This document shows positions 28,500 to 59,645 of a stretch of 64,000 bases of DNA, one piece after another. How positions within the stretch are numbered: position 1 is the first letter of the stretch; the number at the start of each line of letters is the position of its first letter. A program made the translations under genes and the position numbers. Under the pieces are notes generated by a model. The model saw nothing but the letters and a program-made list of their open reading frames with translations. It made no database searches and was not told the origin of the DNA. Origin of the DNA: Selaginella moellendorffii (Eukaryota > Plantae > Lycopodiophyta); NCBI RefSeq assembly GCF_000143415.4, contig NW_003314263.1:1118165-1182164 (forward strand), read 5' to 3'.

Positions 28500-29680
28500 G
28501 CAATCCAGGCTTCCTCCTCTTTCAATCGCCATGGCTTGCAGGCTTAGGGTCGTGATTCTTGGTCCTGGAGCTATTGCGCGCCGTCCTCCATCGCTGGAAC
28601 GCTTGTTTCTTCCGGCGGCAAAATCCTTCGAGCTTTGACAAGGTGAGTCTTCTTCTTTTTTAATTTTAGACGGCCGCGAATGCTGTGACTGAGGAGGAGA
28701 AGCTTCCCAGGGGACAACTTCGCCATGGATCGTTCTCAAGGTATTTCCCACTCCCTTCGTACACCAAGCCGCTGAAATTTTCTGTTGCTGCAGGAGGCAC
28801 TTAGTAGGAAACTGACAGCGGGTATCTGGAAACTGTTGGTCGAGAAACTAGTGCTGCTCCGAGTTCCATTCATCTTGTCCAAGCCCGAGGAGGTGAGTTT
28901 GGGAATCATGGTCAGGCGATCGTCCAAGTTGACGAGCACTCACTGGATCGATGGCAAAGTTGATGGTTACAGCTTCCATCCAGTCCAGGTCTTGCGTTTC
29001 AGAGCAAGTGTTAAAGCTCCCTTTGTTTTGTCGCAGGTTGGTGCTCGGGGATTACCCGGATGTGGCTCACGATCGCGACGCTTGGATCCGCGATTGTGAG
29101 TATCTATATCCACCTCGGTCACTGTTCCATGAAGAGCTACGCTTGCAACTCAACTAAAGTGTGGCTGCAGGGGAAGAGACGAGCCGGGGCCTCAACAGCT
29201 TACAATATACTCGTCGGCAAGCGCGATTCAAGCAGCGATCACCTACAGAAAAAGGGAGCCAAGGGAAAGGGACTTGATCTTCCGGGCCAGGGAAAAAAGT
29301 TGGTAAATTCGCAGCATTTTGCTTTTGCATAAGTTTTTGGCTTATCCAGGGCGAAATACAGTGGTGGATTCATCACTCGAGCCCTCGAGTCGATCCTTTC
29401 GCATTTTTACCACTTCTACCAGGCGAGGCGATTGGACGCACCAGTTCCCGAGGTACTCTTAAATTTCCTTCGCTGTTAGAAACCTCGATGTCTAGTTTGT
29501 CACTCACATTCAGTATAGCCATCCATTCCGAGGCCATGTATGCGTGGATAGAACCAGTTCACCAGTATTCAGCGGCTGCCAGATGTTGGAGCACGCACCT
29601 TCCTGATCGAGGTACTGTGATATCTCAGTTCATCAGAGGTGGTGGAACTTTTTCTTTTGTTGTTCTTGCAGGAGCTCAGA
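28500..29680 (+). pseudogene. Highly deleted family X fragments
   Basis: Fragments catggcttgcaggct, catcttgtccaagcccgaggaggtgagt, gtggctcacgatcgcgacgcttggatccgcgattgtgagtatc and gaggtactgtgatatctcagttcatcagagg match family X exons and introns. Confidence 0.7.
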
Positions 29681-29694
29681 ACCGCGATAACGTA

Positions 29695-31083
29695 TACGAA
29701 AGAGCCATTCGTTTCTTTCCGAGGAATTTTAAACGACGTCAAGGGGCGTATAAAATGTTGGCGGCTGGAATGCTGGCAACAGGTTTGCTCCATTGTAGTC
29801 TTAAGTTGATTGACGTGACCGTTTCGCAATTTTGTGCTTTCTAGAATCTTTGCCCCGACGACGTAAATCTTTCCAGTAATATCATTTAGAGAGCAGAGGT
29901 CCAAGTTAGTTTTTAGATTTCATGACATACCTCTTTCCTCACACTTTCAGATGGGATCTTAACTGCCGTGCAAACTCTTGCATCTTGTTCATTGGACGCC
30001 GGCCTCTGCTCATCCTTGGAGTTGCAGAGCCAACAGTCAATATGTATACGTTTATGACTTCGCAAAGAGCAGGGACCCAAGCTGGACGGGATGGTAAGAG
30101 TATATCAAAGTGTGTTCGTGTCAGCAGGGTCTGCGTTTGGGTTCCAGTTTTACTGTTTCTCTTCAGCAGGTTTACGAGAATTCCTGGAGATCATTCTGGC
30201 ATGGTTAGCTGACACTCAATACCCGTGTTGCTACGGAGAAGGAATTTAACGTGCGCAAGCGATCTGCTACTGCTAGGTGAAATGGTTATTATCTGTGACC
30301 ATGTCCGTCATTCTTGCGAGGCTAACTCAAAGCGAATGCTTGCAGATGAACCGCAATAAGCTTACGGTAACTGCGTACAAAGAGATGGAATCACCACTTC
30401 GGTTTCAGCTCGGGTATGAGGCCATTGCAAACTGAAAACGTTCTCAATGACACAAACTCTTAATTCCAGAAGGAAGAAACTTCTCAGCAGACTCGGTATT
30501 GTCAGGAGTATGAGTTGATACCAGCGTTTTGAAGGACGTAGATGACTTGCTCCCCGTGGAAGTGGAGGAGCAAAGAGACCCTTACAGTCTTTGCTTGCTG
30601 GATTGCGTCGGTGCCATGCCACTCATCACGAAAGTTCTAACTTCACTTTGCAGTCATGGCGATAGAGAGCCTGCCAGGAAAACATTTATGGGAGAGGATT
30701 TTGCTGCTCTTCACCGCACCCAGCCGCAGATTCAAGTACGTAAAAGTCTTCTCTCGCTTTTTTCCTTCCTTTTCCTTGCGTAGCGGTTTCATTCTATCCT
30801 CGCATTCACAAACTTTTCTTGTCGCAGGGTCCTGGACATCCCATTCAAGACGATAATTATCTTCACACTGTTCGAGTTCGTCTATCTTCTGGCCTGCTTT
30901 GGGATTACGTGGATCCCAATTGCCGGAGTCCTGTTCCCCTTGCTCATCATGCTCCTGGTGCAGATTCGCCAATACTTTCGACCAAAGTTCTTCAAGGCAC
31001 ACCACTGGCCACCGCCGAGTACGAAGAGACCCCCGGAATGCCAAACAACAGAGTGTAAGCTTCGTCCTGTGATATCTTCGTGA
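29695..31083 (+). pseudogene. Abridged, inverted copy of the BOR gene
   Basis: It begins gaaagagccattcgtttctttccgaggaattttaaacgacgtcaaggggcgtataaaatgtt (BOR exon 1) and continues through to the [14 protein letters not shown]…EYEE exon. Introns are retained and there are many deletions. Confidence 0.9.
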
Positions 31084-31760
31084 CCACTTGCGTGGCCACC
31101 AGCGGTGGCGATGCCGGCTAGAGCTTGGCTCTCTAGTCGCGTGAGCCAAACGAGGGACTTCTTCTTGCGCCCGAGCTGAAGTAGCAGCCAGCAGTAGACA
31201 AGCCCCAGCGAGATCTTGGTCACGTCGAAAAGATCCAGTAAGTCGCCTTGCGGTGTTTTGCCATGGGTAAAATGAGCCATTACGCTCGCAGATCCTGGAT
31301 AAAAGGTTATGAGTTCCTACTCTCCAAAGAAAAGAAGAATCCGACTCTCCAAAGCTTACGTGTTAGACGCGCCAGTGTTTCCTCTTGATCCTCCCACTCA
31401 GTCGTCGCAGCATTTGCGGCCATCAGCTGGAACAAGAAAATGAAACTCTCAATCAGTGAAACAAGGAAACTGTCAAAGAAGATGAAGTTATCACACTCAC
31501 CTCGTCCAGCTTGGACAAGATGTAGCTGCAGCCCTGGAACTCGGAGCAAAGTGACAAATCCTGGCGCCCATCGCTGGAAGGATCCTGCTGCTGGCGCTGG
31601 AAGAAATAAGCGTTGGCGATGAAAAGACGCAAGGCGGCATTGGACACTAGAGCGTACAATATTTGGAAGATGACTGGTCCAGATGCTACACTTGAGCTCC
31701 AAGACCGTGCCGCCATGGATCCAGCCCATGTCGTCCAAGAACCTTGTGGGATATCCCACA
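31084..31760 (-). pseudogene. Family X copy C (internal fragment, fused to the BOR pseudogene)
   Basis: Encodes FLDDMGWIHGGTV…, LMAANAATTEWEDQEETLARLT and HGKTPQGDLLDLFDVTK…. Confidence 0.9.
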
Positions 31761-34596
31761 AGCACTTCATAAATTAAACCCTCAAAGACTTCAAGAAAAG
31801 GTAATAATATTTCCTCTATAAAAGATATAAAATTATTATAAATTAATTAGTATAAAATTAATTATTAAATATTAAAATATTATTTTTTATAAATTATTTG
31901 ATAACATAAATTTTTTATTTAATAGCAATTATTGCCATTAATATTAATGCATTATTATATGCTAAGGATGATTGTATTATCAGTTAGTGATGACAAAAGC
32001 TTGAGAGCGAAAGATAGTAGTGTAGGAGGCAAAGGATCACACTCTATTGTGTTTAAGCTATAATAAATTTTCAGAATTTAAAAAATAAAAATAAAAATAA
32101 TTATTTTTCTAACCTAATTACTTAAAAAACATTATGAAAACTTTACAAAATAACATTCAATTTGATTGCCAAACATTTTAAGTCTAAATGATTCTTAATT
32201 AAGTATTATAGTATATAGTGATAGTTTCATGTTATAACCTCTATAGTTTATTGTCACTCCAAGTTTCTAATTCAAAATACTTTAACATTCCTATATACAA
32301 GAAACTTTTAAAAGTATTAAATTAAAATTTTCTCACAATCATCTATAGCTTTCAAGTAGAATTTTTTGAATAGAAGATTTGAAACATCATATTGTGTTTC
32401 GTAACATGCAACAAAATGCTCAAACTTGATTCTGTCCAAATCACCGATGCTGATGCTTGCCCTTTCAACAAAAGAGTGTCTCATCCTTAAAATGATGTTA
32501 ATGATATCTATAATAACTTGCAACACAGCCTCCTCATTCACTCATTACTTATTGGTACTTGAGCCTTCCCAAGAATGCTCTTATTTCCTATATTCTAATA
32601 GAAAGTGTTCACTACCTTTGGGATACCTATGAAGTGTTCTATACTAACCATAACGATTGATACACAAGTAAGCATCAGGTTTTGATTATAAAAGCCTCTA
32701 GCACGTATTGCCATCCAAAGAGAAAGTACAGTATACCTAGAAGGGAGTGAGTTCCACCATACAAATTAACCAAAATGAAATGGTGGTGCAACTGATGCTA
32801 GAATTACCACCAATGTCTTTTGATGACTGTAATGAACAACTTCAAATCAAAAAATACATTCTTTCTTACTTTTTTGTCATGAGATACATTTCAGTGTAAC
32901 AAAATTTGGTCTAAAAAATTACCACTAGAAATGTCACCACCATTTACTGGTGGTGCTTGTATATTTCTCAAGAATATTTAACTGGGTGTTGAAGCAGCGA
33001 TGACATCAACAGAAAAATGGACCTGAAATATAGTAACACAGAAATACCACCATTATTACAAGCAGTTTGTGTGCCCAGTGTTTCCAAAACTATAAACTTG
33101 GCAGTGCCTCTGTGTCATACAATCTTACTACTCCACTCCACTCTCATTCAATAAGAATCTATTCAAAAGAAAGAGTGGAAGACACACTCAATTCCAAGTA
33201 TGATACTTTATAGTTTGCTTGATGAGACAAATGGTTCATTACAACCATCCAAGCCATTTCCTCGTTGTTTGTACTCAATTTTTTTTCTTATGCTTGCCTG
33301 CAGAAAGAAAGAAGTTCCATCCTTTTCCTTCCAACAAAATTAAAGTTCATAGCTCTGACTGTCTATATATTGGCCTCCTCAAAGAACGATTGACTGATGG
33401 TAAAAACTGTAGCCTGTGCGATAATACAAACTAAAAGACATGGAAGTTTGAACCCAGCTCATGTGGTAGAGGCACAGTAGTGAGTGCTGCGAGTTGAACA
33501 TAGGGATCTGTGAGGCCTAGCTTCTCTTCTCAGGAAGAACACTGTGACTTGATCCTGGAGCCCGCATGGGAGGCAAAATTTGGAGGTATGGAGCTCATGC
33601 ATTTTGCAAGATTCTGCAGGTGTGCCTTCTGGTCGTGACCTAGGGTCCTGGACTTTGCTGCTCAAACGTTGGCCTGCTCGGAAGCTCGGCTTGGTCGGTG
33701 GTAATGCAGGTTCACAGTTTGAGAGGCGAGACGTCCATGTAATCCTCGAGCGCCAGCTTCAAAAGAAGAATTTAAGGACTTTAGTACTCGAGGCAAGAAC
33801 GAGATGGAAGGACTCACTTCACAGAGCGTTCGGGAACGGTAAGATCACCAAGCTGATCATAAAAGCCCAGCTGGGGAGCTGCTGGCTACACAAGCGTGGC
33901 AGCCAATGCGTTATCGGCGAGCGACAGAGAACCATCGTTGTCTGCAGCTCTACAACTTGGACGAGCGCCTTGAGCCCCGTGGTCACGCCACAGCATCATG
34001 GAGCTTGTGCTTCACATCCCCGTTGTGAGCGTGAACATCCAGCGGAATGACTAAGGCTGCTTGGTCCTCATCCATGTACCATCACTGGACTCTTGCCGCG
34101 GTTATGAGCTCCTGCAAGAACATCACGAAAACAATTACAACCCCTCTGATGGAATCACTGCTAAGGGGCTGGCGTACCTGCAGTTTTTGCTCAATGAACG
34201 AGTTTGAGGAGTTTACTAGCGTGTCCTGGGAGCATTACACACAAGAAGTAGCTCAAAACGCGAATATAAAACACCACAGAACTAGAGAGGGAAGAACCTT
34301 ATATATGTTCGTCGTGTGCTAGCAATGCAAAGCATTCACGCTGCCTGCTTGCAACAAAAAGAGCAAAAGGTGATCCTGCGGTTTCCTTCACAGCCTGCCC
34401 AAGGAAGAGATTTGCACCATGGAACAAACAAATCGAAATATCTTACGAGTGGAGCTTGGAAGCGCCTCGCTTATCTCGAATCCGGCAGCTATCGCCCTGG
34501 GCGCCAAACCCTAGCTTGACGGGCTTGACGGGCTCAACGGTCACGCGTCACCCGTCAGGCATTGACTATATAGTCAACTCTTCCAGCTAGTAATCT

Positions 34597-35280
34597 TTGC
34601 CCTTGACAAAAATGTACACGGCGAGGAGGAGGATGATGCCTCTCGACTTGCTCACGGTGGAAGAACAGGGGCAATTCCAATCCTACATCCACGCGAGACT
34701 TGTCCTGGAGATCCAGATCGCTGTCGCCAGGGCCGGAGCTGGAGTTCTCGGACACGTACACGCACAGGAGCTGGAACGAGAGCTGGCGGCGATGGAGGTG
34801 ATAGAAGAACAAGCGCGAGAGACGGTGCGGACGCGCGCGATGGAGGCGCGGGCGCGACTGGCAGCGGCGGCGATGGAGGTAGCGGCAGCCATCGAGGTGT
34901 GGGATCGAGACATGGAGGCGCGGAGGCGGCGGCGCGACGAGCTGGCGGCCGAGACGATCGAGCTTGCGGCATTGGAAGCGTGGGAGCGAGACGCGGGACA
35001 AAGGCGCGAGCAGGCGGCCATGGAAGCGGCGGCGCGGGCGGCACTGAGCGAGATGGCGGCGGCGATGGAGCGCGAGCTGGGGCCGATGACGTGCGAGCTG
35101 GAGCCGATGGCGATGGAGCGCGAGCTGGAGCAAGCGCTAGCGCTCGAGGTGGCGAACTTAAGCGGGCTGTCCAAAGCGATGGAAGCGCCTGTCGCAGGAG
35201 GAGGACGGATGGAGCAGGAGTGTAATTTGGATGGTTCCATGGAGCTTGGCAGTGTGGATGACTTTATCTCCAATGTCTAG
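34597..35280 (+). CDS. Intronless Ala/Glu/Arg-rich helical protein, paralog of 27666-28274
   Basis: Open ORF (ATG probably at ~34612) with AMEA/AMERELE repeats. The upstream ~200 bp is homologous to 27470-27670. Confidence 0.5.
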   Translation: MPLTKMYTARRRMMPLDLLTVEEQGQFQSYIHARLVLEIQIAVARAGAGVLGHVHAQELERELAAMEVIEEQARETVRTRAMEARARLAAAAMEVAAAIEVWDRDMEARRRRRDELAAETIELAALEAWERDAGQRREQAAMEAAARAALSEMAAAMERELGPMTCELEPMAMERELEQALALEVANLSGLSKAMEAPVAGGGRMEQECNLDGSMELGSVDDFISNV

Positions 35281-35539: not shown

Positions 35540-36160
35540 TCTGGGAAGGATCGCAATGGCTTGTTGGTTAGGGTCGTGGTTCTTGGAATTCCCGGCGGCA
35601 CGGTCGTCCGGAACGCTTTCTTCCAGCGCCAGCAGCAGCAGCCTGGTCAGGATCGAATGGAAGTCGACGAATGTATTGCCCGAGGTAGGTACTGTGATCA
35701 CAGGCGGTGGAACGTATTTGTCTTGCAGGAGCTCATAACGCTGTCTCACCGCTCACTCGCGGCTCACTCGCGGTCCCTGTGTTTGAAGCACGTCACGGAG
35801 ACGCTGGAAACTCACGCTGTCTGCCGAGTTTAGCGTCTCATTCGTGCTGCTGTGCCGTGCTATGGCGTGGGAGAAAGCCACCACGTCACGGAGCTTGGAG
35901 CCGGAAGAGCTGGGCAAGTGATGGATACAATGGTGAAGTTGATGTAAGCTTTCAATCCATCCATTCCAGCTCGAGCGAGTGCTAAAGTTTCCTATGTTTT
36001 TTCGCAGGTGGATTACGATCGCGAGGGTACTGTGAGTATCTATAGCCATCCCATGAAAGCTTGATTGTTTCTTGGCCAAAAAGTTTTTCACAGGCAAGGT
36101 GGTATAGTGTTGTCCGATTCGCTTGCCCTGGAAACCTGTACTGGAAGATTTAACCATACA
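35540..36160 (+). pseudogene. Highly deleted family X fragments
   Basis: FFQRQQQ / SSSLVRIEWKSTNVLP / SVSFVLLCRA / CPIRLPWKP segments occur in parental order, with deletions between them. Confidence 0.85.
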
Positions 36161-36174
36161 GAGGGGGAGGCATG

Positions 36175-37240
36175 GAAACACTGCCCCTTTATCCCCTACG
36201 AGAGCGCGCTCTTCGCCGAGCTGTTGAAGCACCTGGACGCAGCTGGTACTTTCGTTTGTTAGGTCCTGGCGCTATCAGAGCTTTTTCTAACTTCGAATTT
36301 GTCATCTACAGGCTTACTGCGTGGTTGTGGACTGGCATTTCTTATGACGCCGCGAATGATGTTGCAGCTGGGACTCCAAGACGTCTAGGCAGTCCGAATC
36401 CTTGGTCACATCGTGGTATGGCAAGATCAAGGTTCTTTGTATCTCTTCCGTTCCCAGGAAATCACTTGTTTATACATCAACAGTGCGTTCATTCCTGATC
36501 GCAGTTCTCTTACTTTGATCGGAGTGTTGATGCTCAACAGAAACTTGCACAAGCGCTCCTCTTAGGGCTATGATCTTATTATCTGGGAATACCACCTTCA
36601 AACGGAGTCATCCTGCAGTCTCGAAGAGCCTAGCAACGATGAAACACCAGGTCAGTCCATGTTCGTCATTCTTGGGAGGCTAACTCAAAACGAATGTTTG
36701 CAGATTAACTGTAAAGGCGGCAAAGTCAGGCACCAATAACAACGAAAGCTGGGGCAGCATTACGGTAACTTACAATCAGCGTACAAGGAGATTGGAATCG
36801 CCACTTCGGTTTCAGCCAGCATCATCTCGGGTACATGGCCTTTCCAAACTGAAAACGCTGAGAATGACATACAATTCCAGGTAAGAGACCAGGTATTGAA
36901 TCAAGCAAAGACTGTAAGAGGTTGCTAGCTCTTTGCTCCTTCTCTTCCACAGGTAGCAAGTATGGACATTCTTTACAGGATCAAAAACACTGGTGTCAAC
37001 TGCTACTCCTGACAATACTGAATCTGCCGAAGTGTATCGAGGCTGCGTCGGTGCCATGCCAGTCATCAAGGGAATTAGAGAAGCTTCTGATTGCCGGCAG
37101 TTCGCTCTTTAGCCGAAGATTCAAGTACGTGAAAGCCTTTTGCTCGTTTTCCGTTGTCCGTCCTCACAAACTTTCCTTGCCGCAGGGTTGTGGAGGACGT
37201 GCATGCCGCACTCTTCCAGTTCGTCTATCTCCTGGCCTGT
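36175..37240 (+). pseudogene. Second abridged, inverted BOR copy
   Basis: [55 protein letters not shown] and RRFKY pieces. One internal piece (36900-37040) is re-inverted. Confidence 0.9.
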
Positions 37241-37244
37241 GCTC

Positions 37245-37725
37245 GTGCCGAGCTTTCGACTTGGCGCTCTCTCCTGGGCAGCAGACGGCATTCTATGGAA
37301 GTAGTCCCACGCGCGCTCCAGATTGCTGGACTGGGTGAAGGCGCGGATCCTTGTGTCAAGGACACTGTGTTCTTCCACTCCATCGACTCAACTTCTTGAT
37401 AATGCGTTTTATGCATAGGCGTATCATGGTGTTTTCAGAAAAGAGATCCTCTCTCAAATAACGAAGGACCGGCTCGACAGTATGCTGATATCAAAGAATT
37501 CCATGAGATTCTATCTAGAAAACCTCCATGGCATAGGAGACATTTCCCCGCATTGGGCATTTGCGGTGATTATGACATTCCAACACAAGCTGTTCCTTCT
37601 GGGTAAAGCCTTTGCATGGACGAGCTGGAAGTTCTGGTAGCAGCCAATGCCCATTACAGTTGTGGAGTAAACGCTGCGCAGATTGACGCGACATCGGCAT
37701 ATGCCCGCTCCGGGAATATGCTTGG
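37245..37725 (-). pseudogene. Abridged fragment of the PPR gene at 48120-50339
   Basis: Matches 49140-50020 in pieces (SMEWKNTV, RAFTQS..LERA..YFHRMPS, SVYSTTVM, SLCWNVIITANAQ). Confidence 0.85.
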
Positions 37726-37805: not shown

Positions 37806-39708
37806 ATGGATCGTGGATCATCCCACAGAGTCGTGGTTCTTGGACGACGCGGGGTGGATCCATGGCGGCACGGTCTCTGAGTGGGAGGATCACGAGGAGA
37901 CACTGGCGCGTCTAACACGTAAGTTTTGGAGAGTCGGATTCTTCTTTTCTTGAGAGTTAACCTTTTATCCAGGATCTGCGAGCGTGATGGCTGGTTTTTT
38001 TCATGGCAAAACACCCCAAGGCGACTTACTGGATCTTTTCGACGTGACCAAGATCTTGCTGGAGCTTGTCTACTGCTGGGTGCTGCTTCAGCTCGGGCGC
38101 AACCGGCAGTCCCTCGTTTGGCTCGCGCTACTAGAGGCCCAAGCTCTAGTCGGCACCGCCGCCGCTGGTGGCCAAGGACAACAAGTGGAGAAGCTTTTCT
38201 TGTTTCTCCTGGACAACTTCGATTACGAGTCTCGGCCAGATCACGCTAGCTTAGCGAGGCTGAGACAAATCCACGACAGCTTGAGCAGCAGCCTGGTCAG
38301 GATCGAATGGAAGTCGACGAATGTATTGCCTGGTGCCCTCCAGATGCTCGAGGTACTGTGATATTTCAGTTCATCAGAGGTGGTGTCCAAACTCTTTCTT
38401 CTTTGTCCTTGCAGGAGCTCATAGCTGCGCATGATACGATTGGTGATGATCACGTATACGGCAGTCATGGCCACTTCGCCCACTGGTTTCGGGACCACTC
38501 GCGGTCCTACAATCGCTCCCGCCGGTGGAAGCGAGCCTTCTACCCCGTCGACGCGAGCGAGCTCCTCGGCCGCCTTGTCCACTCCTGGATGAGGACCAAG
38601 AGAGGTGCCACGGACCACGCGCGGCTCCAGTCCCTGAGTTGCTCCACGAGCAAGGATTTCGTGGAGCACGTCAAGCAGACGCTGGAAAGTAACGTCGCGG
38701 AGGAGAAGCGCAATCTTCATCACGCGGCTGCCGTGGTTTTTGGCCCCGAGCTTAGCGTCTCGTTCTTGCTGCTGTGCCGTGCGGTGGCGTGGGACGAATC
38801 CACCACCTCACAGATCTTGGGCGCGGAAGAGCTGGGGAGTATCAATGGTAAGCCGATCGTCCAAGTTGATGAGCGCTCAGTGGATACGGTGGTGAAGTTG
38901 ATGGTTAACGTAAGTTTTGCATACGTTCCAGGTGTTGACTTTCAGAGCGAGTGCTAAAGTTTTCGTTGTTTTCTCGCAGGTGGTGCTCGGGGATTTCCTG
39001 GATGAGGCTCACGATCGCGAGACTTGGATCCGGGACTGTGAGTATCCATATCCATCCCAGGAAAGTTTGATTGAATTCTGGTCTTCTTTCACAGGCAAGG
39101 TGCTGCTCAAGAAGCGTTGTCCGCTTCGCTTGCCCTGGAAACCTGCGGCGAGCGTCCATTTTCTGGAAGATGTGACCATGGAGAGGTGGAGGGAGATGGA
39201 CGCTTGGATCCGATCTCCTGGCACACTGAGTGAGCTGGGAATGGCGAGCTACGAGCAAGCTCTCCAGGCGATGAGGGACGCGATCTTCTGGGACGGAAGT
39301 GTTGTTGTGGATAAAGCCAGCCAGGAGTTCGTGACGAGGATTGGCAAGGTGCTGGAAGCAAAGGAAGATCAGGTCTACGAGCTGATAGAGATCTACACTG
39401 ATGAAAGGTTCCAGAAGGCTAACAGTGAGACGGCGGCGGCGAGCAAGACGAGAGGCAGGGGATCCATGGCCGAGTTTGCGGTGGTCGCGAATGCTCACCC
39501 CGTGGTAATGGGTCTCCTGTCCACGCGGCAGCGCTGTCACATGTTTATGCGGTCGGGGTGCCCGTTGCAAGGGGGACAAGCCATCACCAAGGTGGATTGC
39601 ATGATGATTGAGTACGCGAGGCTTCGCGCTGAGCAACGGTTTGACACTACTCACATTGGCTATGCTTGTTACCATGATAACAAGAAGAAATCTTGCATAT
39701 TCTGCTGA
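37806..39708 (+). pseudogene. Family X copy D (5'-truncated, inverted relative to A and B; 3' exons open)
   Basis: Same exons as copy A from EWEDHEETLARLT to YACYHDNKKKSCIFC. The downstream flank to ~40400 is also homologous to 18250-18800. Confidence 0.8.
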
Positions 39709-50339: not shown

Positions 50340-50388
50340 GCATGATGCAAGGGTTAGAACTTAGATATTAACTTTTGTGAAAGAATGA

Positions 50389-51010
50389 ATGATCTCGATC
50401 GCTCTATCCCAGCACGATCAAGATTGGCAGCAGCAAAAGAAGCTCCTAATTTCAGCGCTACAAGAATGCGCTGGCTTGCAAGAAGGAAGGCAACTCCACG
50501 CACAGATTTCATCGCAGGGACCAGCTGTTGCTAAATCTGCTGATCAAAATGTACAGCGACTATGGCAGGATCGATCTGGCTCAGTATATCTTTGAAAGAA
50601 TGCCGCTGATTCTTGGCATATGCCCAGAACGGGGGGCAGAGGTTCTCTCCATGAAAACGCAGTCATGGAATTTGATGATCCAGGCATGAAGAAGTTGAGA
50701 CCATTGCAGTGACTTTTAGCAGCGTTTTCATGCCTGCGCTGCCGCTGCAAGCCTCTCGGACACACACTTTCATTTCGAGGCTCTCGATCGAGTTCGCTTG
50801 TTTTCCTGTGAGAAACCTTGTTTTGTGGAGCTCCATGGTATAGCAGTGAAAGTCTGGCCGTGTTCCAAGCAATGGACTTGGAAGGCATGGCACCAAACGA
50901 TGAGTATCATATCTGCAGCATGTAGTCACGGGGACTGCTGGTGAGGATGCATGGGAATCAGCCAGGGATGGATTATTTTGAGTATCACTCCTGGATCATC
51001 CAACACTCAA
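50389..51010 (+). pseudogene. Abridged, inverted copy of the PPR gene at 52371-54072
   Basis: It runs from the parent's start (atgatctcgatcgct…QHDQDWQQQKKLLI) to its end (ggatcatcca(a/g)cactc) in ~620 bp, versus ~1700 bp for the parent. Confidence 0.92.
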
Positions 51011-52370: not shown

Positions 52371-54050
52371 TCAAGAGTGCTGGATGATCCTCAAGTCACT
52401 TAAATCCAAGGAGTGAGACGCAGCTATTTCCTTGGCTTCCTCCACCTTTCCTGTCCTTCCAAGCAAATCCGCCAAGCACGCAAAATGATCCATCCCTGGC
52501 TGAATCCCATAGTCCTGGAACATCCTCACGAAGTAGAGCCTGCCATCTTCCAGCAGTCCCCCGTGACTACACGCTGAGATGATACTCACAAAAGTTACCT
52601 CGTTCGGTGCCATGCCTTCCAAGTCCATTTCTTGGAACACGGCCAGACTCTCGCTGCTATACCCACACTGGGCATATCCCGCAACCATGGAGCTCCATGA
52701 GACAACATTCCTCACAGGCATTTGCTTGAAAACACCCGCAACACTCTGGAGCGCTCCACAGCTCCGGTACGCGTCCATGAGCGAATTGGACACAACAGTG
52801 TCAAGCTCGATCGAGAGCCCGGAAATGGAGCTGTGGATCTTCCTTGTGTCTGAGAGGCTTGCAGCGGCAGCGCAGGCATGAAAAACGCTGCTCAAAGTCA
52901 CTGTATTGGGTTCCACTCCTTCATGCTGCATTCTCTGGAAGATTTGCAAAGCCGAATTACGATGCCCATTGCGAGCATATGTGGTTATCATTGCCGTCCA
53001 GGCAACTACATCCCTATTATCAATGCTATCAAAGATAATTCGTGCTTCTAACACTCCACTGTGTTTGCCATAGCAATCCACCAGCGCTGTTTTCACTTCC
53101 ATGGCTTGAAATGCGTCGTTGCCTCCCTGGACGGCGCTCTCATACACACTCTTTACCTCCTCCAAACTCGAGCACGCCTCGATCGCGCTCACGAAGGTGA
53201 TGGCATCGGCGGAAGAAGTATCGCCTTCCAGATCCATGGCGCACAGCAGTAGAATCGCATGCTTGGATCTTCCATTGCGATTGCATGCCGAGACGATCGC
53301 GTTCCAGATCGTAGTGTTTCTATGGGGAGTGCCATGGAAGAGATTTAGAGCTAGTGGTAGATTGCCATTGTCGGCGAGCGCCGTGATCATCGTCGCGGCG
53401 GCCACCACATCCCTGGCATCGTCCCGGAGAGCATCGAAGATCTCTTGGGCTTGGCGAGGTCTGCCGAGCCGACCATACATCTTCATCAGCTCGTTCGCCA
53501 CGTGTTGGCAGCCCACGTCGCTCCCACCGTCGCGGGCAACGGCGTGCATGAGATCCGCCATCGCCAAGCTCGAGCAGCAGCTTAGCACTGGTGCGATGGC
53601 GAATCTATCGGGTTTTACGCCGTCGAGATCCATCAGTACGAACAGTCGGAAGGCACGATCACCATTGCCGGCTCTTGCTTGCGCCTGGATCATCGAGTTC
53701 CATGACACGGCATCCCTTAACGGCATCTTGTCAAAGAGAACCTCTGCCTGTTCAAGATGCCCGTTCTGGGCATATGCTACGAGCATGATGTTCCAAGAGA
53801 AAACGTTCCTCCGCGGCATTTCCTTAAAGATGTATTGAGCCAGATCCATCCTGCCATAGTCGCTGTACATCTTGATCAGGAGATTTAGCAGCAGCTGGTC
53901 CCTGCGAAGGATGTGGCACTGTGAAATCCGTGCGTGGAGTTGCCTTCCTTCTTGTAAGCCAGCGCATTCTTGAAGCGCTGCAATTAGGAGCTTCTTTTGC
54001 TGCTGCCAATCTTGATCGTGCTGGAAAATCCTGGCTGGGACGACGTGCAT
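52371..54050 (-). CDS. PLS-class PPR protein (E domain truncated)
   Basis: 559-aa ORF with FSWNIMLVAYAQNGH, VSWSSMVAGYAQ and HFACLADLLGRTGKVEEAKE. Confidence 0.92.
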   Translation of the reverse strand: MHVVPARIFQHDQDWQQQKKLLIAALQECAGLQEGRQLHARISQCHILRRDQLLLNLLIKMYSDYGRMDLAQYIFKEMPRRNVFSWNIMLVAYAQNGHLEQAEVLFDKMPLRDAVSWNSMIQAQARAGNGDRAFRLFVLMDLDGVKPDRFAIAPVLSCCSSLAMADLMHAVARDGGSDVGCQHVANELMKMYGRLGRPRQAQEIFDALRDDARDVVAAATMITALADNGNLPLALNLFHGTPHRNTTIWNAIVSACNRNGRSKHAILLLCAMDLEGDTSSADAITFVSAIEACSSLEEVKSVYESAVQGGNDAFQAMEVKTALVDCYGKHSGVLEARIIFDSIDNRDVVAWTAMITTYARNGHRNSALQIFQRMQHEGVEPNTVTLSSVFHACAAAASLSDTRKIHSSISGLSIELDTVVSNSLMDAYRSCGALQSVAGVFKQMPVRNVVSWSSMVAGYAQCGYSSESLAVFQEMDLEGMAPNEVTFVSIISACSHGGLLEDGRLYFVRMFQDYGIQPGMDHFACLADLLGRTGKVEEAKEIAASHSLDLSDLRIIQHS

Positions 54051-54259
54051 GATCTAAAGCGATCGAGATCATTATATCTTGGCTGTGTAAACTATCACCA
54101 CTACAGTACTACCGACCATCTATAACTGCGATCCATCCATGCGATGCCAGCCGTCACGATGGGGAGGACGTCTACTGCCAAATTCGCTGATTTACGCCTA
54201 CGGCCGCCTCCACAGCGCCATCGTGGAGCAGGGAGTCTTCGATCGATGCAAAATCTCGT

Positions 54260-54930
54260 CTCTGACGATGATCTCGGTGTAGAACGCGATGCTGCTGGAG
54301 GCGCTGGCGATCCACCGGGCCATGGACGTGGAGGGCGACGAGATCACGGTGGTGAGCGCGCTGGATGCCTCCTCTACGATGTTCTCGCGGATGATCCAGT
54401 GAAACTGCCGTGGCCAAGAGGCGCTGGATCCACACGCTGTTGATCGAGTCGGGGCTGCTGCTCGATCGGTCAAACACCACAACCACCACCACCACCACCA
54501 CCACCACCACCACCCTGCCGTCAACGTAAGGCCTGTGTTGTTGCATGATCGAGGGGACTGACTGCTCTTAAGGCGCTCCAAGTGATCGTATCTTGCTTCT
54601 ATCGTCTAATCCGCGAAGTTGTCCTCGGCAAAGATATATGAGATGGCAAGTGGATGTCCGCAGCATTGCCTCGGCATCTGCCTCTATTCGCCAGAAGAGC
54701 CTCCACTCGTGGTCATTCCTCGTTGCAGAAAATGCCCAGAGCGGGCATATTGCAGATGCTGCGTCAAAGATGGCCCTTCACAACTTTATAACTGTCATGA
54801 TCCTTGGCTACTGCCAAACTCTCAGCTTGTCCAGTCACGGGCTCTTTCTGATCATATGCCCAGTAAAGACAGCGTGTGGTTGAATGCCATAATCTCAGCC
54901 TATGCCCGGGCCGGGCATGTTTGCTACAAG
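54260..54930 (+). pseudogene. PPR fragments, including an inverted abridged piece of 48120-50339, with a (CCA)n microsatellite at ~54476-54513
   Basis: AMDVEGDEITVVSALDA; SIASASA…IRQKSLHSWSFLV…SGHIADAA; VMILGYCQ; LNAIISAYARAGHV. Confidence 0.8.
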
Positions 54931-55315
54931 CAGCGTGTGGAGCACTGAGATGGTAAAAGTCCGGGACGACACACGCGACTCTGGGGCCGTCTCGATCGAT
55001 CCGGGACAAGAGCTCCGCGAGTGGATCCTCCATTCGGAAGATGGCCTGGGAGAAGGCGGCCTGTGCGTCGAAGTTCTTCTCATCGAAGCCATTGGAAAGT
55101 CACACGTTCATAGAGATGAACTCGAAGCGAATGTCGTGGCCATTATTCACAGGATTGTCCTCGCTCTTCCAGGATTGCTGCAAGGTTTCGTGGATGCTAT
55201 CAGCGTTGATGACTCCGAGGAGCGCAAGCTTGCGGGCGAGATAGATGATTGGAACGACATGTCCCTGTGCTAGAAGTGGGATAAGAACAACGTGAAGTTT
55301 CGAGAGAGAGCCCAT
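54931..55315 (-). pseudogene. UDP-glycosyltransferase N-terminal fragment, copy 1
   Basis: MGSLSKLHVVLIPLLAQGHVVPIIYLARKLALLGV…; MEDPLAELLSRIDRDGPRVACVVPDF; contains frameshifts. Confidence 0.88.
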
Positions 55316-55617
55316 GGATGATGATTAGACCAAGAAACAAAAAAGAAACTTTTCAAAGAGGAAGTTTTGAGGGATCGTTTGAGTTACCAGCACTTATGGG
55401 CTGAATTGGGCATTGTTGTTTCTTTTACGTCTTGCCTTTCATTATTTCTGATTTGCAATAGGAACCATATAGTCCAGTATTGGAGTAATGTTTAGTGGTG
55501 AGAATTCTACGTTGTGGCTTGAACGAAAACTGACTACTCTGAATCAACAATTGAATTTATTACTAGAGCTATAAAGATTTTATTTGATTTAAGATAGATT
55601 TGAGTTTATAAACGGTT

Positions 55618-56334
55618 TTAATTCCCTTTAAAAACCTTTAAGGTTTTTAAAACCTTTAAGCTCAATTTAGGTAGTCTTTTAGCAAAATTCAATTTGCTTG
55701 GTTGCTTCGTTTGTTGAAGATTGTGTAGATCAAATTCCTCGCACTCTGAGTGATGAGTGGAAGTCCTGTCAAAAACTATCAGTTTGCATTGAGGCACTAG
55801 CGTTAACTTCCCCTCGATCTTTACATCAAAGTATCTGATGGTCAACTCTCGCGTTTTAGGGTTGGGCTTGTCCTGGTCAAAGTATCCCAGTGGAAACCAC
55901 CACTGGCAGGGATACTCTATGTTGCCCCACAACTGGAACTTGTAATACTGGAGATTGGATCGAATAATTGCTTTCGTGACAAGAGTGTCTTTGGAAAGTT
56001 GGCCAACTTTAAAAGGTTTTTGATAGTCCACCTTTCGAGGATTGATGTATTTCAACTCAAACTCCTCCACGGGCATTTGGGCATTGTCTTTGCCATAGAA
56101 ACTCACAATTGTAGACACCTCAAATCCAGAGAGAGGTTTGACAAGGATGAATCTCAGCTTGGTGAGCTTGAATCTTGCTTCTCGACCTGTTTTACCCAAA
56201 AACTTCCACTCTCCATCTTGGTCCTCTTTCCCAAATACTTCACACTCTAAATTGTTGGTGTTGGAAGACAATAAAATCTTCTCCACTTTCATTACCCTTG
56301 GGAGTTCTACAACTAATTCTTTGCTATGAGCCAT
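55618..56334 (-). CDS. Intronless 238-aa protein of unknown function with two internal beta-rich repeats
   Basis: Clean ORF with ATG start and a ctatataa box ~35 bp upstream. A decayed copy of its 3' end lies at ~57725-57925. Confidence 0.65.
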   Translation of the reverse strand: MAHSKELVVELPRVMKVEKILLSSNTNNLECEVFGKEDQDGEWKFLGKTGREARFKLTKLRFILVKPLSGFEVSTIVSFYGKDNAQMPVEEFELKYINPRKVDYQKPFKVGQLSKDTLVTKAIIRSNLQYYKFQLWGNIEYPCQWWFPLGYFDQDKPNPKTRELTIRYFDVKIEGKLTLVPQCKLIVFDRTSTHHSECEEFDLHNLQQTKQPSKLNFAKRLPKLSLKVLKTLKVFKGN

Positions 56335-56794
56335 GAGAATCCTATCAAACCCTAATTCTTGGAACTCTTATATAGAAGTTCCACAAAAGGTAGCTGCTTT
56401 GTGAGAGGTTCCAAAAAAGACGTCAATCTTTCTTTTTAATCCAAAATATAAAAAATTAACTCTTTTTGCAATTTAAACCCTTTATATTGATCCTTTGAGA
56501 ATATTCTTGTTTAATTGGGAAAAAATACCAAAACACAGTATTAACTCTGGCACCATCTTGAGAGTTTGTAAATATGCTTGCATGAAATGAAAGTCCAGAA
56601 CTGAAGACAGTAAAATGAAAGTTAGACAACTTACTTGGCAAAGCTCTTGAAATGCTTGCCTCTGCCGAAAATAGTCACTCATGCAAAACTAGAGTGTGAG
56701 ATGATTTAAAGACTGTAACTATCATCTGGCATCTATGAAGTTACCCTTTTTGGCATAATATTGTATTTAATATCAAAGAGAAGCTTTGGTTTAT

Positions 56795-57665
56795 GCAAAT
56801 GCCCGTTCTGGGCATATGCTGTGAGCATCACATACAGCAAACGAGATTCTTAGGCAAGGCGCGATCGAAAACCATCTTAGCGGAATCCACGTCGCCCTCT
56901 TGGCCATAGGTGACGATCATGATCGTTGCCGCGACAGCGTTTTTTAGCAGCATCCCCGCGAAGAAATCAATTGCCCGAGCGAGATCCCCATTCAGGAACA
57001 TGATCGTCCAGGAGAAAAGATTGGGCGATTGCGTAGTCGTTACATCTCGTGACTCCCCGACTTTCTGGAAGTCTCTGTCATGCATGAAAAGTGGAATGTC
57101 TTGCGATCTTAGCTGCATTCCAGGGATGTAAGAAATCAGCTTGTCAACTCCCTCTGGCAACCACAAGCTTGAGAACTTCCATGTTTTCTTAGCACACACT
57201 TCTAGATCGGTCGAAGCTTTACCTTTGACAGGAACCTCTCCCATCTCCAGGAGCTTTGGAACGTGGAATTCGATGGCAGCCCAAGCAGCATTTCCCGGCC
57301 AAAAGCCCAATCCTGCCTTCTTTGCAGCGTGTGGAGCACTGAGATGGTAAAAGTCGAGACGACACAGCCGTCTCGATCGATCCGGGACAAGAGCTCCGCG
57401 AGTGGATCCTCCATTCGGAAGATGGCCTGAGAAAAGGCGGCCTGCGCGTCGAAGTTCTTCTCATGGAAGCCATTGGGAACTCGCAAGTCCATAGAGATGG
57501 ACTCGAGGCCCATTATTCACAGGATTGTCCTCGGCTCTTCCAGGATTGTTGCAAAGTTTCGTGGTCACAGTGACTCCGAGGAGCGCGACCTTGCGGGCGA
57601 GATAGATGATTAGAACTTCCCTGTGCTGGAAGTGGGATTGAAGTGTCGAGAGAGAGCCCATGAAC
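56795..57665 (-). pseudogene. UDP-glycosyltransferase N-terminal fragment, copy 2, fused to PPR fragments
   Basis: MDLRVPNGFHEKNFDAQAAF, FWPGNAAWAAIEFHVPKLL and ISYIPGMQLRSQDIPLF, then PPR pieces NLFSWTIM…AKMVFDR…AYAQNGH. Confidence 0.85.
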
Positions 57666-58629
57666 AAAGAAGAAACTTTTCAAAAAGGAAGTTTTGATGG
57701 ATCGTTTGAGATACCAGCAAGATTTATTTAATTTAAGATAGATTTGAGTTTATAAATGTTTTTAATTCCTTATGAGAACATTTAAGGCTTTTAAAACCTT
57801 TAACCTCAAATGGGGTAGTTTTTTTAGCAAAATCCCATTTGTTTGGTTGTTTATCAAATTCCTTGGAAAGTCTTGTTAAAAATTATCAGCTTGCATTGAG
57901 GCCCTAGTGTTAACTTTCCCTTGTTCTTCATGCATTCTTTGATAGAATATTCTCAAGGAGTTTAAAAAGGATCAATATAAAAGCCTTATGAAGAGTTAGT
58001 TTAAAGATTTTGGATTTGTAAAAACGATTAAAGTTTTTTTTGGGATTTGTGAATTATTCACAATACAGGGTTATGAATTTAAAGAGACTCTGACTAAGTT
58101 ATCACTCATTTTAAGTTATGATATAGTATTAAATTCACCCTAGATGCAACAACACTACCTAAATTGGATTGCAATGGAAATAAAAGTAAAATAATCTTTG
58201 ACATGAATAATATTGTATACTGTCTCACTAATTTATCTTGGTCAAGAAGGTTAGGAAGGATCAATCAGCATATATGTAATACCCTTTATGATGTAAGGAG
58301 AATTGATGACTACAAAATCATAGATAATGGTTATCAAACATCAGGCATATCACTTGATCTAGTAAATAAACTTAAGCTCCCTACAGCTCACAATCACAAG
58401 TGTAATGAGTCCAAATGCAAATGATCAGCTGAAAGAAGGGTATAGAATTGAAAATTTATATAAGTTTTGGAAAGTTTTTAGTTCTTAGGGAAGATTGGCT
58501 TCATAAGAATGTGGCAATTATTAACTTTAGGAATCACATTGTTACGTTTAAGTGTAGTGAATTAAGTTGGTGGCACAGATTTCAATATCCACATGGTATA
58601 TAGGAATCTCCATTATAAATAAATAATAA

Positions 58630-59645
58630 AAACAGAATAATATTTATCACGATGGAACACTAACACTCCTTTCAACTTCAACAGAGTGGATCTTACAGGC
58701 ACTCACAAAGCATCCGCAGTTGGAAACAAATAGCATTATACTTATGATCTCCTCAGCATCATCCAAGTGTGTATATCCACTTACAGGACGAGCGCCCTCT
58801 TGTATTCACCTGCCTGTAGCCAAAGGCAATGAAATTTTCGTCAAACTCGTGGGTGTGCTTATGTGCTCTATCAGGAGACATGCTCTTCACTTTCACCATT
58901 TTGACCACTCGAGTGTCCAAGCGACTGGAATGGCTTCACGGTACGAAGTTTCGATTTAATCCCGTTTAAACAGAATAATATTTAGCACGATGGAATTGCG
59001 AGCAACACTAACCCTCCTTTCAACTTCAACAGTGTGGATCTTGCAGGCACTCACGAAGCATCCCCAGTTGGAAACAAATAGCATTATACTTATGATCTCC
59101 TCGGCATCATCCAAGAGCCCACAAAAACACCTATCAAGCAGCATAGTGATCTCACTTGGGACTTAGATCATAGTCAGAAACCATTGGAGCCAAAGCGTCT
59201 CTAGCAGGGATTACCAGCCCAAGGTGGCAGCAAGCTATCAAAAGGCCCATGAAACTCTTGAGATTCAAGACTTTAAAGAGCTGAATGGACACAGTAGATT
59301 CTGGGCAAACGATACAATAAGAATGGTCCTACTCATGATGTTTGGCTGTAAACAGCATCTAAACAATGCCCAAGCATCGTCCAAGTGTCCATTTTGCCCG
59401 TACGCTCCGATCATGCAGAACTTCTACAGTGTCAAACAAGCACTTTGCTTCGCATACATGCCCTCGTTCGGCATATGCAGTGATATAGAATCTCGTAGAA
59501 CTCTTTGATGTCAGCATACTGAAAATTTGACGAGATGCCGGACAAAGATGTGGTATCCTGGAATGTCGCAGTAGCGGTATATGTGCTGTCCGGGCGCCAA
59601 GCTTTTGTTTGAGAGAATGGCTTGCGCTTGAAACACCATGACGGG
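58630..59645. pseudogene. PPR E-domain remnants (duplicated at ~58632-58767 and ~58969-59114) and an inverted abridged piece of PPR 48120-50339 (~59390-59640)
   Basis: DDAEEIISIMLFVSN..CFVSACKIH occurs twice on the minus strand. FDEMPDKDVVSWNVAVAVY occurs on the plus strand. Confidence 0.75.

What the first reader, a model, noticed from the sequence alone, without database searches (positions are those of the whole stretch)
28500..59645. Window-wide pattern: neighbouring genes are repeatedly recopied as deletion-shredded, mostly antisense 'digests'
Seen in sequence: at least ten such copies. They are BOR x2 (29695-31083, 36175-37240), PPR-48120 x3 (37245-37725, 54640-54930, 59390-59640), PPR-52371 x1, family X x3 (~17640-17810, 28500-29680, 35540-36160) and the orphan ORF x1 (~57725-57925). 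Introns are retained, so the copies are DNA-derived rather than retrocopies. The kept blocks remain easily recognisable while much of the length is lost, and the donors mostly lie within ~15 kb. Inference: either a template-switching replication/repair process writes condensed local copies, or deletion bias is extreme. The copies could act as a local antisense/siRNA layer. This is my best candidate for an undescribed system here.
Basis: partly seen in the sequence, partly recalled or inferred. Interest (0 to 1): 0.75.

Follow-up and report, generated by a model that had tools for sequence, protein, structure and literature searches.

The report
Decaying local gene duplicates in spikemoss
The "shredded" gene copies are real, but they are ordinary leftovers of a few local multi-gene duplications in Selaginella moellendorffii, slowly eroded by many small deletions at the same pace as nearby non-coding DNA, so no new copying system is needed.

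Summary
The window is Selaginella moellendorffii nuclear DNA. Introns and intergenic flanks are retained, so these are DNA-level copies.

The copies are not ten-plus separate recopyings. They collapse into a few multi-gene blocks with matching ages:
- One inverted duplication of a head-to-head PPR pair, later split by a 4.55-kb insertion. It accounts for three "copies".
- BOR'1 plus an X 5' piece, which mirror the X_C-BOR pair.
- A third mosaic, X'2-BOR'2-PPR'a, of a single age class.

Erosion looks gradual:
- 100 indel events: 88 deletions (median 12 bp) and 12 insertions.
- 0.11-0.18 events per substitution in all but a few short or little-decayed pieces (0.05-0.10), against 0.15 in ordinary non-coding flank.
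- Indel density rises with divergence (rho 0.69, p 0.013).
- All deletions in the two BOR copies are private.
- A simulation shows the aligner does not invent small gaps.

Orientation is about 5 inverted to 3 direct, which is not biased. No transposon ends were found. This is known deletion-biased pseudogene decay. An earlier scan note on another piece of this genome (s1-368710) reached the same conclusion. Small-RNA output and haplotype comparison could not be tested.

The parts
17598..17787 (+). X0: small remnant of orphan family X, inverted relative to X_A/X_B
   Evidence: K about 0.25 vs B
18038..21391 (-). X_A: full family X gene with flanks (gene model SELMODRAFT_438157); first unit of the direct tandem duplication with X_B
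23083..26509 (-). X_B: second full family X unit. K vs A is 0.10 in the CDS and 0.14 in the 3' flank
27470..28264 (+). Y: repeat-rich coiled-coil-like orphan gene; its paralogue Y' lies at 34389-35123
28887..29112 (+). X'1a: family X fragment (exon, intron, exon)
   Evidence: K 0.18-0.21
29604..29686 (+). X'1b: family X fragment, out of order with X'1a; abuts the BOR'1 start-codon region
29700..31082 (+). BOR'1: inverted copy of the whole BOR gene. 2368 bp reduced to 1357 bp by 22 deletions; introns retained
   Evidence: K 0.116
31084..31768 (-). X5p: 5' part of a family X copy. Together with BOR'1 it mirrors the X_C-BOR arrangement
   Evidence: K 0.09-0.12
33533..33731 (+). Heavily deleted PPR48120-like remnant; three collinear inverted blocks
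34389..35123 (+). Y': diverged paralogue of Y, occupying the same relative position in the second mosaic
35622..36170 (+). X'2: family X fragment that shares a 10-bp indel and several substitutions with X_B and also carries many private deletions
   Evidence: K 0.15 vs B, 0.22 vs C
36186..37239 (+). BOR'2: inverted, truncated BOR copy with private deletions and an in-place 140-bp micro-inversion at 36902-37041
   Evidence: K 0.18-0.21
37234..37722 (-). PPR'a: PPR48120 fragment in direct orientation, beginning with a short inverted piece; joined to BOR'2 through a 6-bp microhomology
   Evidence: K 0.196
37808..39754 (+). X_C: family X copy inverted relative to A/B, 5'-truncated, with a roughly 290-bp internal deletion
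39858..40114 (-). PPR'': 256-bp PPR48120-like piece inside the 3' flank of X_C, in place of about 200 bp that X_A has there
40820..43291 (-). BOR (borate/bicarbonate transporter family) gene, taken as the parent of BOR'1 and BOR'2; its full reading frame was not verified
48120..50339 (-). PPR48120: intact intronless PPR gene, the parent copy
50381..50941 (+). PPR52': decayed inverted copy of PPR52371, including a little 5' flank. 1488 bp reduced to 546 bp
   Evidence: K 0.144
52371..54050 (-). PPR52371: intact intronless PPR gene, the parent copy
54660..54927 (+). PPR48'b: left half of one decayed inverted PPR48120 copy (donor 50101-49786)
   Evidence: K 0.16
54930..55821 (.). O: first copy of the orphan direct repeat, inside the 4.55-kb insertion that splits the PPR48 pseudogene
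57324..57928 (.). O': second, deletion-shortened copy of O in direct orientation
   Evidence: K 0.117
59485..59626 (+). PPR48'c: right half of the same decayed PPR48120 copy (donor 49776-49592), only about 10 bp beyond the end of PPR48'b in donor coordinates
   Evidence: K 0.139

Best explanation
This 42-kb stretch of the Selaginella moellendorffii genome is a birth-and-death cluster. It holds an orphan gene family (X), a BOR transporter gene and several PPR genes.

A handful of local DNA-level segmental duplications, some tandem and some inverted, each copied several neighbouring genes together with their introns and spacers. One copy of each gene stayed under selection. The redundant copy drifted and was whittled down step by step.

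The whittling follows the genome's ordinary mutation spectrum, which is strongly deletion-biased. Most events are 4-50-bp deletions, with an occasional one of 0.2-0.8 kb or more. Later insertions, micro-inversions and further duplications scrambled the debris. This makes a few events look like many separate gene-by-gene 'digests'.

Shown here: the copies, their collinearity, their ages, the deletion spectrum and its equality with the neutral flank. Inferred: the order of events, and end-joining or replication slippage as the molecular source of the deletions.
For: 1. DNA-level, multi-gene blocks.
- Introns are retained in both BOR copies (A1).
- Segment 49809-50941 is collinear in inverted orientation with 52550-54927 across both PPR genes and their shared spacer (7 collinear HSPs). 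Each arm keeps one intact gene and one decayed gene.
- PPR48'b and PPR48'c are contiguous in donor coordinates (about a 10-bp gap) and are split by a 4.55-kb insertion.
- BOR'1 plus X5p is collinear with X_C plus BOR, apart from one 2.7-kb gap.

2. Fragments within a block have equal ages.
- K 0.116 and 0.121 for BOR'1 and X5p.
- K 0.144, 0.160 and 0.139 for the PPR palindrome pieces.
- K 0.15-0.22 for X'2, BOR'2 and PPR'a.

3. Erosion is gradual.
- 100 indel events in 13 copy/donor alignments.
- Events per substitution are 0.11-0.18 in most copies and 0.05-0.10 in a few short or little-decayed pieces. The value is 0.15 in the non-coding 3' flank of the intact A/B tandem pair and 0.05 in the X coding sequence.
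- Indel density correlates with K (Spearman 0.69, p 0.013).
- Median indel size is similar in both: 12 bp in the copies and 10 bp in the flank.
- All deletions in BOR'1 and BOR'2 are private.
- X'2 shares one indel with X_B and then carries private ones.
- 30 of 88 deletions are multiples of 3, so there is no coding constraint.

4. Not an alignment artefact. In simulations, 3 true large deletions were called as about 3 events, and 22 true deletions as about 17.

5. Family X shows a continuous decay series: intact A and B, 5'-truncated C, X5p, X'2, X'1a and X'1b, X0.

6. Published precedent. Short deletions of 5-178 bp (mean 25.9 bp) remove redundant duplicated genes in maize, and their accumulation is proposed to erase whole genes (PMC2893956). 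The same short-deletion mechanism operates in diploid barley (PMC3706897).
Against: - X5p has fewer indels per substitution (0.05) than BOR'1 (0.18), although I assign both to one block. Fisher p is 0.06. Gene conversion by intact X copies or residual constraint might explain this, but I did not show it.
- The second mosaic is not collinear with any single donor arrangement. BOR'2 is inverted while X'2 and PPR'a are direct, and a BOR 3'-flank piece lies out of order. Plain duplication plus deletion does not fully explain its origin.
- Divergences between the two parallel mosaics disagree: Y/Y' about 36% different, BOR'1/BOR'2 about 20%.
- PPR is a very large family, so the local 'donors' of the PPR pieces could not be checked against the rest of the genome.
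- Everything rests on one haplotype of one 64-kb window.
Confidence: 0.8

Rival explanations
1. Some mosaic pieces were created by double-strand-break repair that copies nearby DNA into the break (SDSA 'filler' DNA), or by replication template switching (FoSTeS/MMBIR). The candidates are X'2-BOR'2-PPR'a, the 256-bp PPR'' piece in the X_C flank, and the micro-inversions. These pieces then decayed by ordinary deletions. This would concern the origin of the pieces, not their shortening, and it is compatible with the main explanation.
For: - The BOR'2/PPR'a junction shares a 6-bp microhomology (GGCCTG), and PPR'a begins with an inverted 49093-49176 piece.
- There is an in-place 140-bp inversion in BOR'2, with a 7-nt inverted repeat at one breakpoint in the parent.
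- PPR'' replaces about 200 bp of flank that X_A has.
- The three components have the same age class, K 0.15-0.22.
- All templates lie within 15 kb.
- Filler DNA from SDSA is documented in plants (PMC3706897).
Against: - The order X-BOR-PPR in the mosaic matches the order of the intact genes to its right. A tandem duplication followed by inversion and deletion could give the same picture.
- Only one junction shows clear microhomology.
- Deletion junctions overall show no microhomology excess: 0.88 against 0.71 bp, p 0.07.
Confidence: 0.3
2. One reading: a dedicated process writes already-condensed, mostly antisense copies of neighbouring genes in one step.
For: Many fragments of neighbouring genes abut one another with little spacer. 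Much length is lost while the retained blocks stay 80-95% identical.
Against: - Indels scale with substitutions and match the neutral flank rate and size spectrum.
- Deletions in the two BOR copies are all private.
- The copies are old (K 0.1-0.25) and none is young yet condensed.
- Orientation is not biased.
- The copies include spacers and neighbouring genes.
Confidence: 0.03
3. The gene fragments were captured and moved by a transposon (Pack-MULE, Helitron or CACTA).
For: Chimeric arrays of intron-containing fragments from several genes are typical of such elements. This is from general knowledge and was not tested against a transposon library.
Against: - No terminal inverted repeats flank the mosaics. 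The only inverted repeats found are the gene fragments themselves.
- The 30 larger ORFs tested by Pfam carry no transposase or helicase domains.
- Family X has only Selaginella hits, in two clusters, among 1.84 billion representatives.
- All donors are local and partly collinear.
Confidence: 0.04
4. The decayed inverted copies are retained because they give rise to hairpin or antisense RNA that regulates the parent genes, as proto-miRNA or siRNA loci formed by inverted duplication.
For: - PPR52' and PPR52371 form an inverted repeat (215 bp at 87%) that a read-through transcript could fold.
- The published gene model SELMODRAFT_404200 runs on the + strand through the second mosaic. If transcribed, it would carry PPR-antisense sequence.
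- Gene-fragment siRNA loci acting in trans are known in Brassica (bioRxiv 10.1101/2021.06.10.447945).
Against: - The retained blocks are not clearly more conserved than neutral flank. Mismatch dispersion is similar, and the flank is just as over-dispersed.
- Deletions show no pattern of sparing.
- S. moellendorffii shows no obvious 24-nt small-RNA peak (PMC5569507).
- No expression data were available.
Confidence: 0.07

Closest known systems
Fractionation and pseudogene decay by a short-deletion mechanism (Woodhouse et al. 2010, PMC2893956; deletion-biased DNA loss as in Drosophila dead-on-arrival elements and Arabidopsis LTR decay, the latter two from general knowledge)
   Same: Redundant duplicated genes are removed piecemeal by many small deletions of 5-178 bp. 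One copy of each pair stays intact, and loss is reciprocal between duplicated segments. Deletions far outnumber insertions.
   Different: The duplicates here come from local tandem and inverted segmental duplications, not from whole-genome duplication. Flanking direct repeats or microhomology are not significantly enriched here, possibly because the events are old.
Birth-and-death evolution of tandem gene clusters (for example restorer-like PPR clusters and R-gene clusters; general knowledge)
   Same: Repeated local duplication, inversions, intact members interleaved with pseudogene fragments, and lineage-specific families.
   Different: Unrelated genes (BOR, PPR, orphan X, Y) are co-duplicated as blocks, rather than one family expanding alone.
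Filler-DNA / SDSA gap patching and FoSTeS/MMBIR template switching (PMC3706897 and references therein)
   Same: Short intron-containing pieces of nearby genes are joined in either orientation. One junction has 6-bp microhomology, and there is an in-place micro-inversion.
   Different: Most copies here are collinear multi-gene blocks. Their shortening is due to later deletions, not to the copying step.
Inverted duplication of target genes as the origin of plant miRNA/siRNA loci (Allen et al. 2004, general knowledge; siren loci, bioRxiv 10.1101/2021.06.10.447945)
   Same: A decayed inverted copy lies next to its parent PPR gene.
   Different: No evidence here for a hairpin transcript, small RNAs or selective retention.

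Membership tests
Duplicated (non-processed) pseudogene fragments from segmental duplication | Introns and non-coding flanks of the parent are present in the copy | tested here: met
   Three BOR introns are retained in BOR'1 and/or BOR'2 (A1). PPR52' includes 5' flank (50381-50406 matches 54080-54055).
Duplicated (non-processed) pseudogene fragments from segmental duplication | Neighbouring genes are copied together in conserved order (collinear blocks) | tested here: met
   The PPR48/PPR52 palindrome has 7 collinear HSPs. BOR'1 plus X5p mirrors X_C plus BOR. The second mosaic is only partly collinear.
Duplicated (non-processed) pseudogene fragments from segmental duplication | No coding constraint in the copy | tested here: met
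   30 of 88 deletions are multiples of 3. Indels per substitution are three times the rate in the X coding sequence.
Neutral deletion-biased decay | Indel load proportional to substitution load and equal to that of ordinary non-coding DNA | tested here: met
   Spearman 0.69, p 0.013. 0.11-0.18 events per substitution in most copies (0.05-0.10 in a few short or little-decayed pieces) against 0.15 in the A/B flank. Tested within one window only.
Processed retrocopy | Introns absent, poly(A) tail, copy limited to the transcript | tested here: not met
   Introns and upstream flank are retained.
Pack-MULE / TIR-transposon gene capture | Terminal inverted repeats and target-site duplication flanking the chimeric fragment array | tested here: not met
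   The inverted-repeat search of 26400-38000 found only gene-fragment arms.
Helitron gene capture | 5' TC and 3' CTRR ends with a subterminal hairpin; the same array present at multiple genomic sites | not tested
MMBIR/FoSTeS or SDSA filler patchwork | Microhomology at junctions between segments copied from several nearby templates, with inverted segments | tested here: inconclusive
   One junction has 6-bp microhomology and two small in-place inverted pieces exist. The other junctions show none.
Inverted-duplication small-RNA locus | Fold-back transcript and small RNAs mapping to the arms | not testable with these tools
   The inverted arms exist. No expression or small-RNA data were available.

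The most novel reading that the evidence does not exclude
Selaginella's compact genome may combine an unusually high rate of local inverted or patchwork duplication (template-switch repair using templates within about 15 kb) with a Drosophila-like deletion spectrum. If so, inverted debris such as PPR52'/PPR52371, or the read-through model across X'2-BOR'2-PPR'a, could be a steady source of hairpin or antisense RNAs acting on PPR and other parent genes, in a plant that lacks a prominent 24-nt siRNA class.
Probability: 0.06. Interest if true: 0.5.

Novelty: already known. Interest (0 to 1): 0.15.

Why it matters
The result mainly serves as a calibration. In this deletion-prone, compact genome, old local duplicates look like deliberately "digested" copies, and a few block duplications can pass for many gene-targeted events.

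The numbers are a useful local estimate of the neutral indel spectrum of S. moellendorffii: a deletion-to-insertion ratio of about 7:1 by events, a median deletion of 12 bp, and about 0.15 indels per substitution. They help explain how the genome stays small.

The result also flags a published gene model, SELMODRAFT_404200, that threads through pseudogene debris.

Tried and rejected
- Rfam scan of the whole window: no hits.
- Pfam on family X exons, Y, Y' and the orphan ORFs: nothing. ESM Atlas on an opposite-strand X_B-region ORF: no usable hit.
- HMMER against 1.84 billion representatives with one X exon ORF (by reference): only two Selaginella clusters. X is therefore a lineage-specific orphan, not a transposon protein.
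- LTR-retroelement reading of the orphan direct repeat O/O': the ends show no obvious TG..CA termini or target-site duplication. Left open.
- Terminal inverted repeats around the mosaics: none.
- Microhomology at 50 clean deletion junctions: 0.88 against 0.71 bp expected, p 0.07, not significant.
- A gap-cheap global aligner over-split the gaps. I replaced it with MAFFT plus block filtering and validated that by simulation.
- Test for extra conservation of retained blocks: only mild over-dispersion, no more than in neutral flank.
I could not fetch the second haplotype or any other genomic copies, so no genome-wide or haplotype test was possible.

Full report
**Identity of the DNA**

The window is nuclear DNA of the spikemoss Selaginella moellendorffii. 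A family X exon ORF (window:18801-19514:-) matches the protein SELMODRAFT_438157 at 100%. That protein lies on a 4.46-Mb scaffold.

The left 17 kb holds ordinary plant genes, including a GH28 polygalacturonase and a CAMTA-like gene with IQ, TIG and ankyrin domains. It has essentially no internal duplicates: only three short chance-level matches. All the repeated material lies between 17.6 and 59.6 kb. The only match outside that span is one AT-rich element at the window's start.

**Check of the observation**

I also found five more remnants:
- PPR48-like remnants at 33533-33731 and 39858-40114;
- a family X 5' piece at 31084-31768;
- short X-like pieces upstream of three X units.

Pfam confirms three PPR genes and a BOR (HCO3_cotransp) gene. 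Family X is a multi-exon orphan gene. It runs on the minus strand in copies A and B and on the plus strand in C. Among 1.84 billion cluster representatives, only two Selaginella clusters match it.

A three-way alignment of the BOR parent with both copies shows retained GT..AG introns (A1).

**How many events**

The fragments are not independent.

1. The PPR palindrome. Segment 49809-50941 holds the 5' part of PPR48120 plus the decayed PPR52'. It is the mirror image of 52550-54927, which holds intact PPR52371 plus the decayed PPR48'b. Seven collinear HSPs connect the two, including the spacer around both start codons. This is one inverted duplication of a head-to-head gene pair followed by reciprocal loss.

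2. One PPR48 copy, not two. PPR48'b ends at donor position about 49786 and PPR48'c starts at about 49776. They are two halves of a single copy, split by a 4.55-kb insertion. That insertion carries the 'orphan' direct repeat O/O'.

3. The BOR'1 block. BOR'1 plus X5p (29700-31768) mirrors X_C plus BOR (37808-43291), apart from one 2.7-kb gap.

4. Parallel mosaics. The two mosaics share the order X-like piece, Y, X', BOR'. X'1b and X'2 share derived states.

Divergence supports this grouping:

| Block | Fragment | K |
|---|---|---|
| BOR'1 block | BOR'1 | 0.116 |
| BOR'1 block | X5p vs C | 0.121 |
| PPR palindrome | PPR52' | 0.144 |
| PPR palindrome | PPR48'b | 0.160 |
| PPR palindrome | PPR48'c | 0.139 |
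| Second mosaic | X'2 | 0.15-0.22 |
| Second mosaic | BOR'2 | 0.18-0.21 |
| Second mosaic | PPR'a | 0.196 |
| Orphan repeat | O/O' | 0.117 |
| Intact tandem pair | A/B | 0.10-0.14 |

About four to six events therefore explain the seventeen or so fragments.

**Orientation**

For families with a single donor the count is 5 inverted to 3 direct.
- Inverted: BOR'1, BOR'2, the 33.5-kb PPR remnant, PPR48'b/c, and PPR52'.
- Direct: PPR'a, PPR'' and O'.

The two-sided binomial p is about 0.7. Family X has intact copies on both strands, so 'antisense' is undefined there.

**Gradual or one-step shortening**

I used MAFFT pairwise alignments and counted only ungapped blocks of at least 10 bp and at least 70% identity. 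Across 13 copy/donor alignments this gave 100 indel events:
- 88 net deletions, totalling 3208 bp, with a median of 12 bp. Most are 4-49 bp and two exceed 200 bp.
- 12 net insertions, totalling 38 bp.

A simulation on the BOR parent shows the pipeline does not create small gaps. Three true large deletions were called as about 3 events, and 22 true deletions as about 17.

The evidence for gradual erosion is as follows.
- Indel events per substitution are 0.11-0.18 in most copies and 0.05-0.10 in a few short or little-decayed pieces. The non-coding 3' flank of the intact A/B tandem pair gives 0.15, with a similar size spectrum (median 10 bp). The X coding region gives 0.05.
- Indel density rises with divergence (Spearman 0.69, p 0.013).
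- A third of the deletions are multiples of three, so there is no coding constraint.
- Every deletion in the region shared by BOR'1 and BOR'2 is private to one copy. The parent's branch is short: 3, 9 and 17 unique substitutions in 154 sites.
- X'2 shares one 10-bp indel with intact X_B and then carries its own deletions.
- Family X forms a decay series from intact copies to near-vanished remnants.

The fraction of length lost does not track K. It is dominated by a few large deletions.

All of this fits stepwise neutral loss.

**Mechanism of the deletions**

Microhomology at 50 clean junctions is not significantly above chance: 0.88 against 0.71 bp, p 0.07. This fits end-joining or slippage, with any signal blurred by age. 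It gives no support to long-microhomology template switching as the source of the deletions.

**What template switching may still explain**

The second mosaic is not simply collinear with its donors.
- BOR'2 contains an in-place 140-bp inversion (A3). A 7-nt inverted repeat sits at one breakpoint in the parent.
- BOR'2 joins an inverted PPR piece through a 6-bp microhomology.
- A 256-bp PPR piece replaces about 200 bp of the X_C 3' flank.

These look like filler-DNA or template-switch repair. That mechanism is documented in plants (PMC3706897). It bears on how the pieces arose, not on how they were condensed.

**Transposon capture**

No terminal inverted repeats flank the mosaics. The 30 larger ORFs tested by Pfam carry no transposon domains.

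**Function**

Retained blocks are not clearly more conserved than neutral flank.

The published model SELMODRAFT_404200 (1193 aa) runs from Y' through X'2, BOR'2 and PPR'a into X_C. This is most simply an over-extended prediction through debris, but it would be worth checking against RNA data.

S. moellendorffii shows no obvious 24-nt small-RNA peak (PMC5569507). Gene-fragment siRNA loci do exist in other plants. No small-RNA data could be examined here.

**Comparison with what is known**

The pattern matches the short-deletion mechanism that removes redundant duplicates in maize: 5-178 bp, mean 25.9 bp, with accumulation proposed to erase whole genes (PMC2893956). It also matches deletion-biased DNA loss in compact genomes.

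An earlier follow-up in this scan, on another piece of the same genome (s1-368710), reached the same conclusion. I tested it independently here. Note s1-368820 on this window describes the PPR52' inverted repeat. I find that repeat to be one arm of a two-gene palindrome.

**Limits**

- Only one window and one haplotype were examined.
- X5p has fewer indels than its block partner BOR'1 (Fisher p 0.06), which remains unexplained.
- The divergences of Y/Y' and BOR'1/BOR'2 disagree, so the full duplication history is not resolved.

**Verdict**

The proposed 'system' is not supported. This is ordinary, already-described deletion-biased decay of local segmental duplicates, with some repair-type rearrangements mixed in.

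Noticed in passing
window 34612-39705 (+): The published gene model SELMODRAFT_404200 (1193 aa, P0003) threads one ORF through Y', X'2, BOR'2, PPR'a and X_C. It is probably an over-extended prediction through pseudogene debris. If it is transcribed, it would carry PPR-antisense sequence.
   Followed up: partly
window 36902-37041: There is an in-place micro-inversion of about 140 bp inside the BOR'2 pseudogene. A 7-nt inverted repeat (41549-41555 / 41578-41584) sits at one breakpoint in the parent gene.
   Followed up: partly
window 18038-21391, 23083-26509, 37808-39754: Family X is a multi-exon gene of about 600-800 aa with no Pfam domain. Only two Selaginella clusters match it among 1.84 billion representatives, so it is a lineage-specific orphan family. 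One further member (SELMODRAFT_447662) lies on another scaffold.
   Followed up: partly
window 27666-28274 and 34597-35280 (+): Orphan gene Y and its paralogue Y' are rich in Met, Glu, Ala and Arg. Y carries 4.3 copies of a 54-bp coding tandem repeat (27854-28083). The two paralogues are only about 64% identical.
   Followed up: no
window 54930-59478: A 4.55-kb insertion splits a PPR48120 pseudogene. It contains the O/O' direct repeat (2.4-kb spacing) and an AT-rich tail with a further 112-bp direct repeat (58656-58767 and 59004-59115). I saw no clear transposon ends. A 10-bp motif at its left edge recurs 59 bp upstream in the PPR piece.
   Followed up: partly
window 48120-48137: The convergent PPR genes 46458-48137 (+) and 48120-50339 (-) overlap by 18 bp at their 3' ends.
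   Followed up: no
window 23019-23072, 26555-26636, 34088-34161: A conserved piece of 55-80 bp resembles an X exon-intron boundary. It sits 46 bp to 2.3 kb upstream of the 5' end of each minus-strand X unit (A, B, X5p). It may be part of the duplicated unit, or a promoter-proximal element.
   Followed up: partly
window 44-292 and 22701-22940: An AT-rich repeat, 76% identical over about 250 bp, occurs in two AT-rich spacers. It may be a small non-autonomous transposon.
   Followed up: no
window 17.6-59.6 kb (all copy/donor alignments): The indel spectrum is unusual compared with mammals. Only 14 of 88 deletions are 1-3 bp, the mode is 10-19 bp, and insertions are almost all 1-3 bp.
   Followed up: yes
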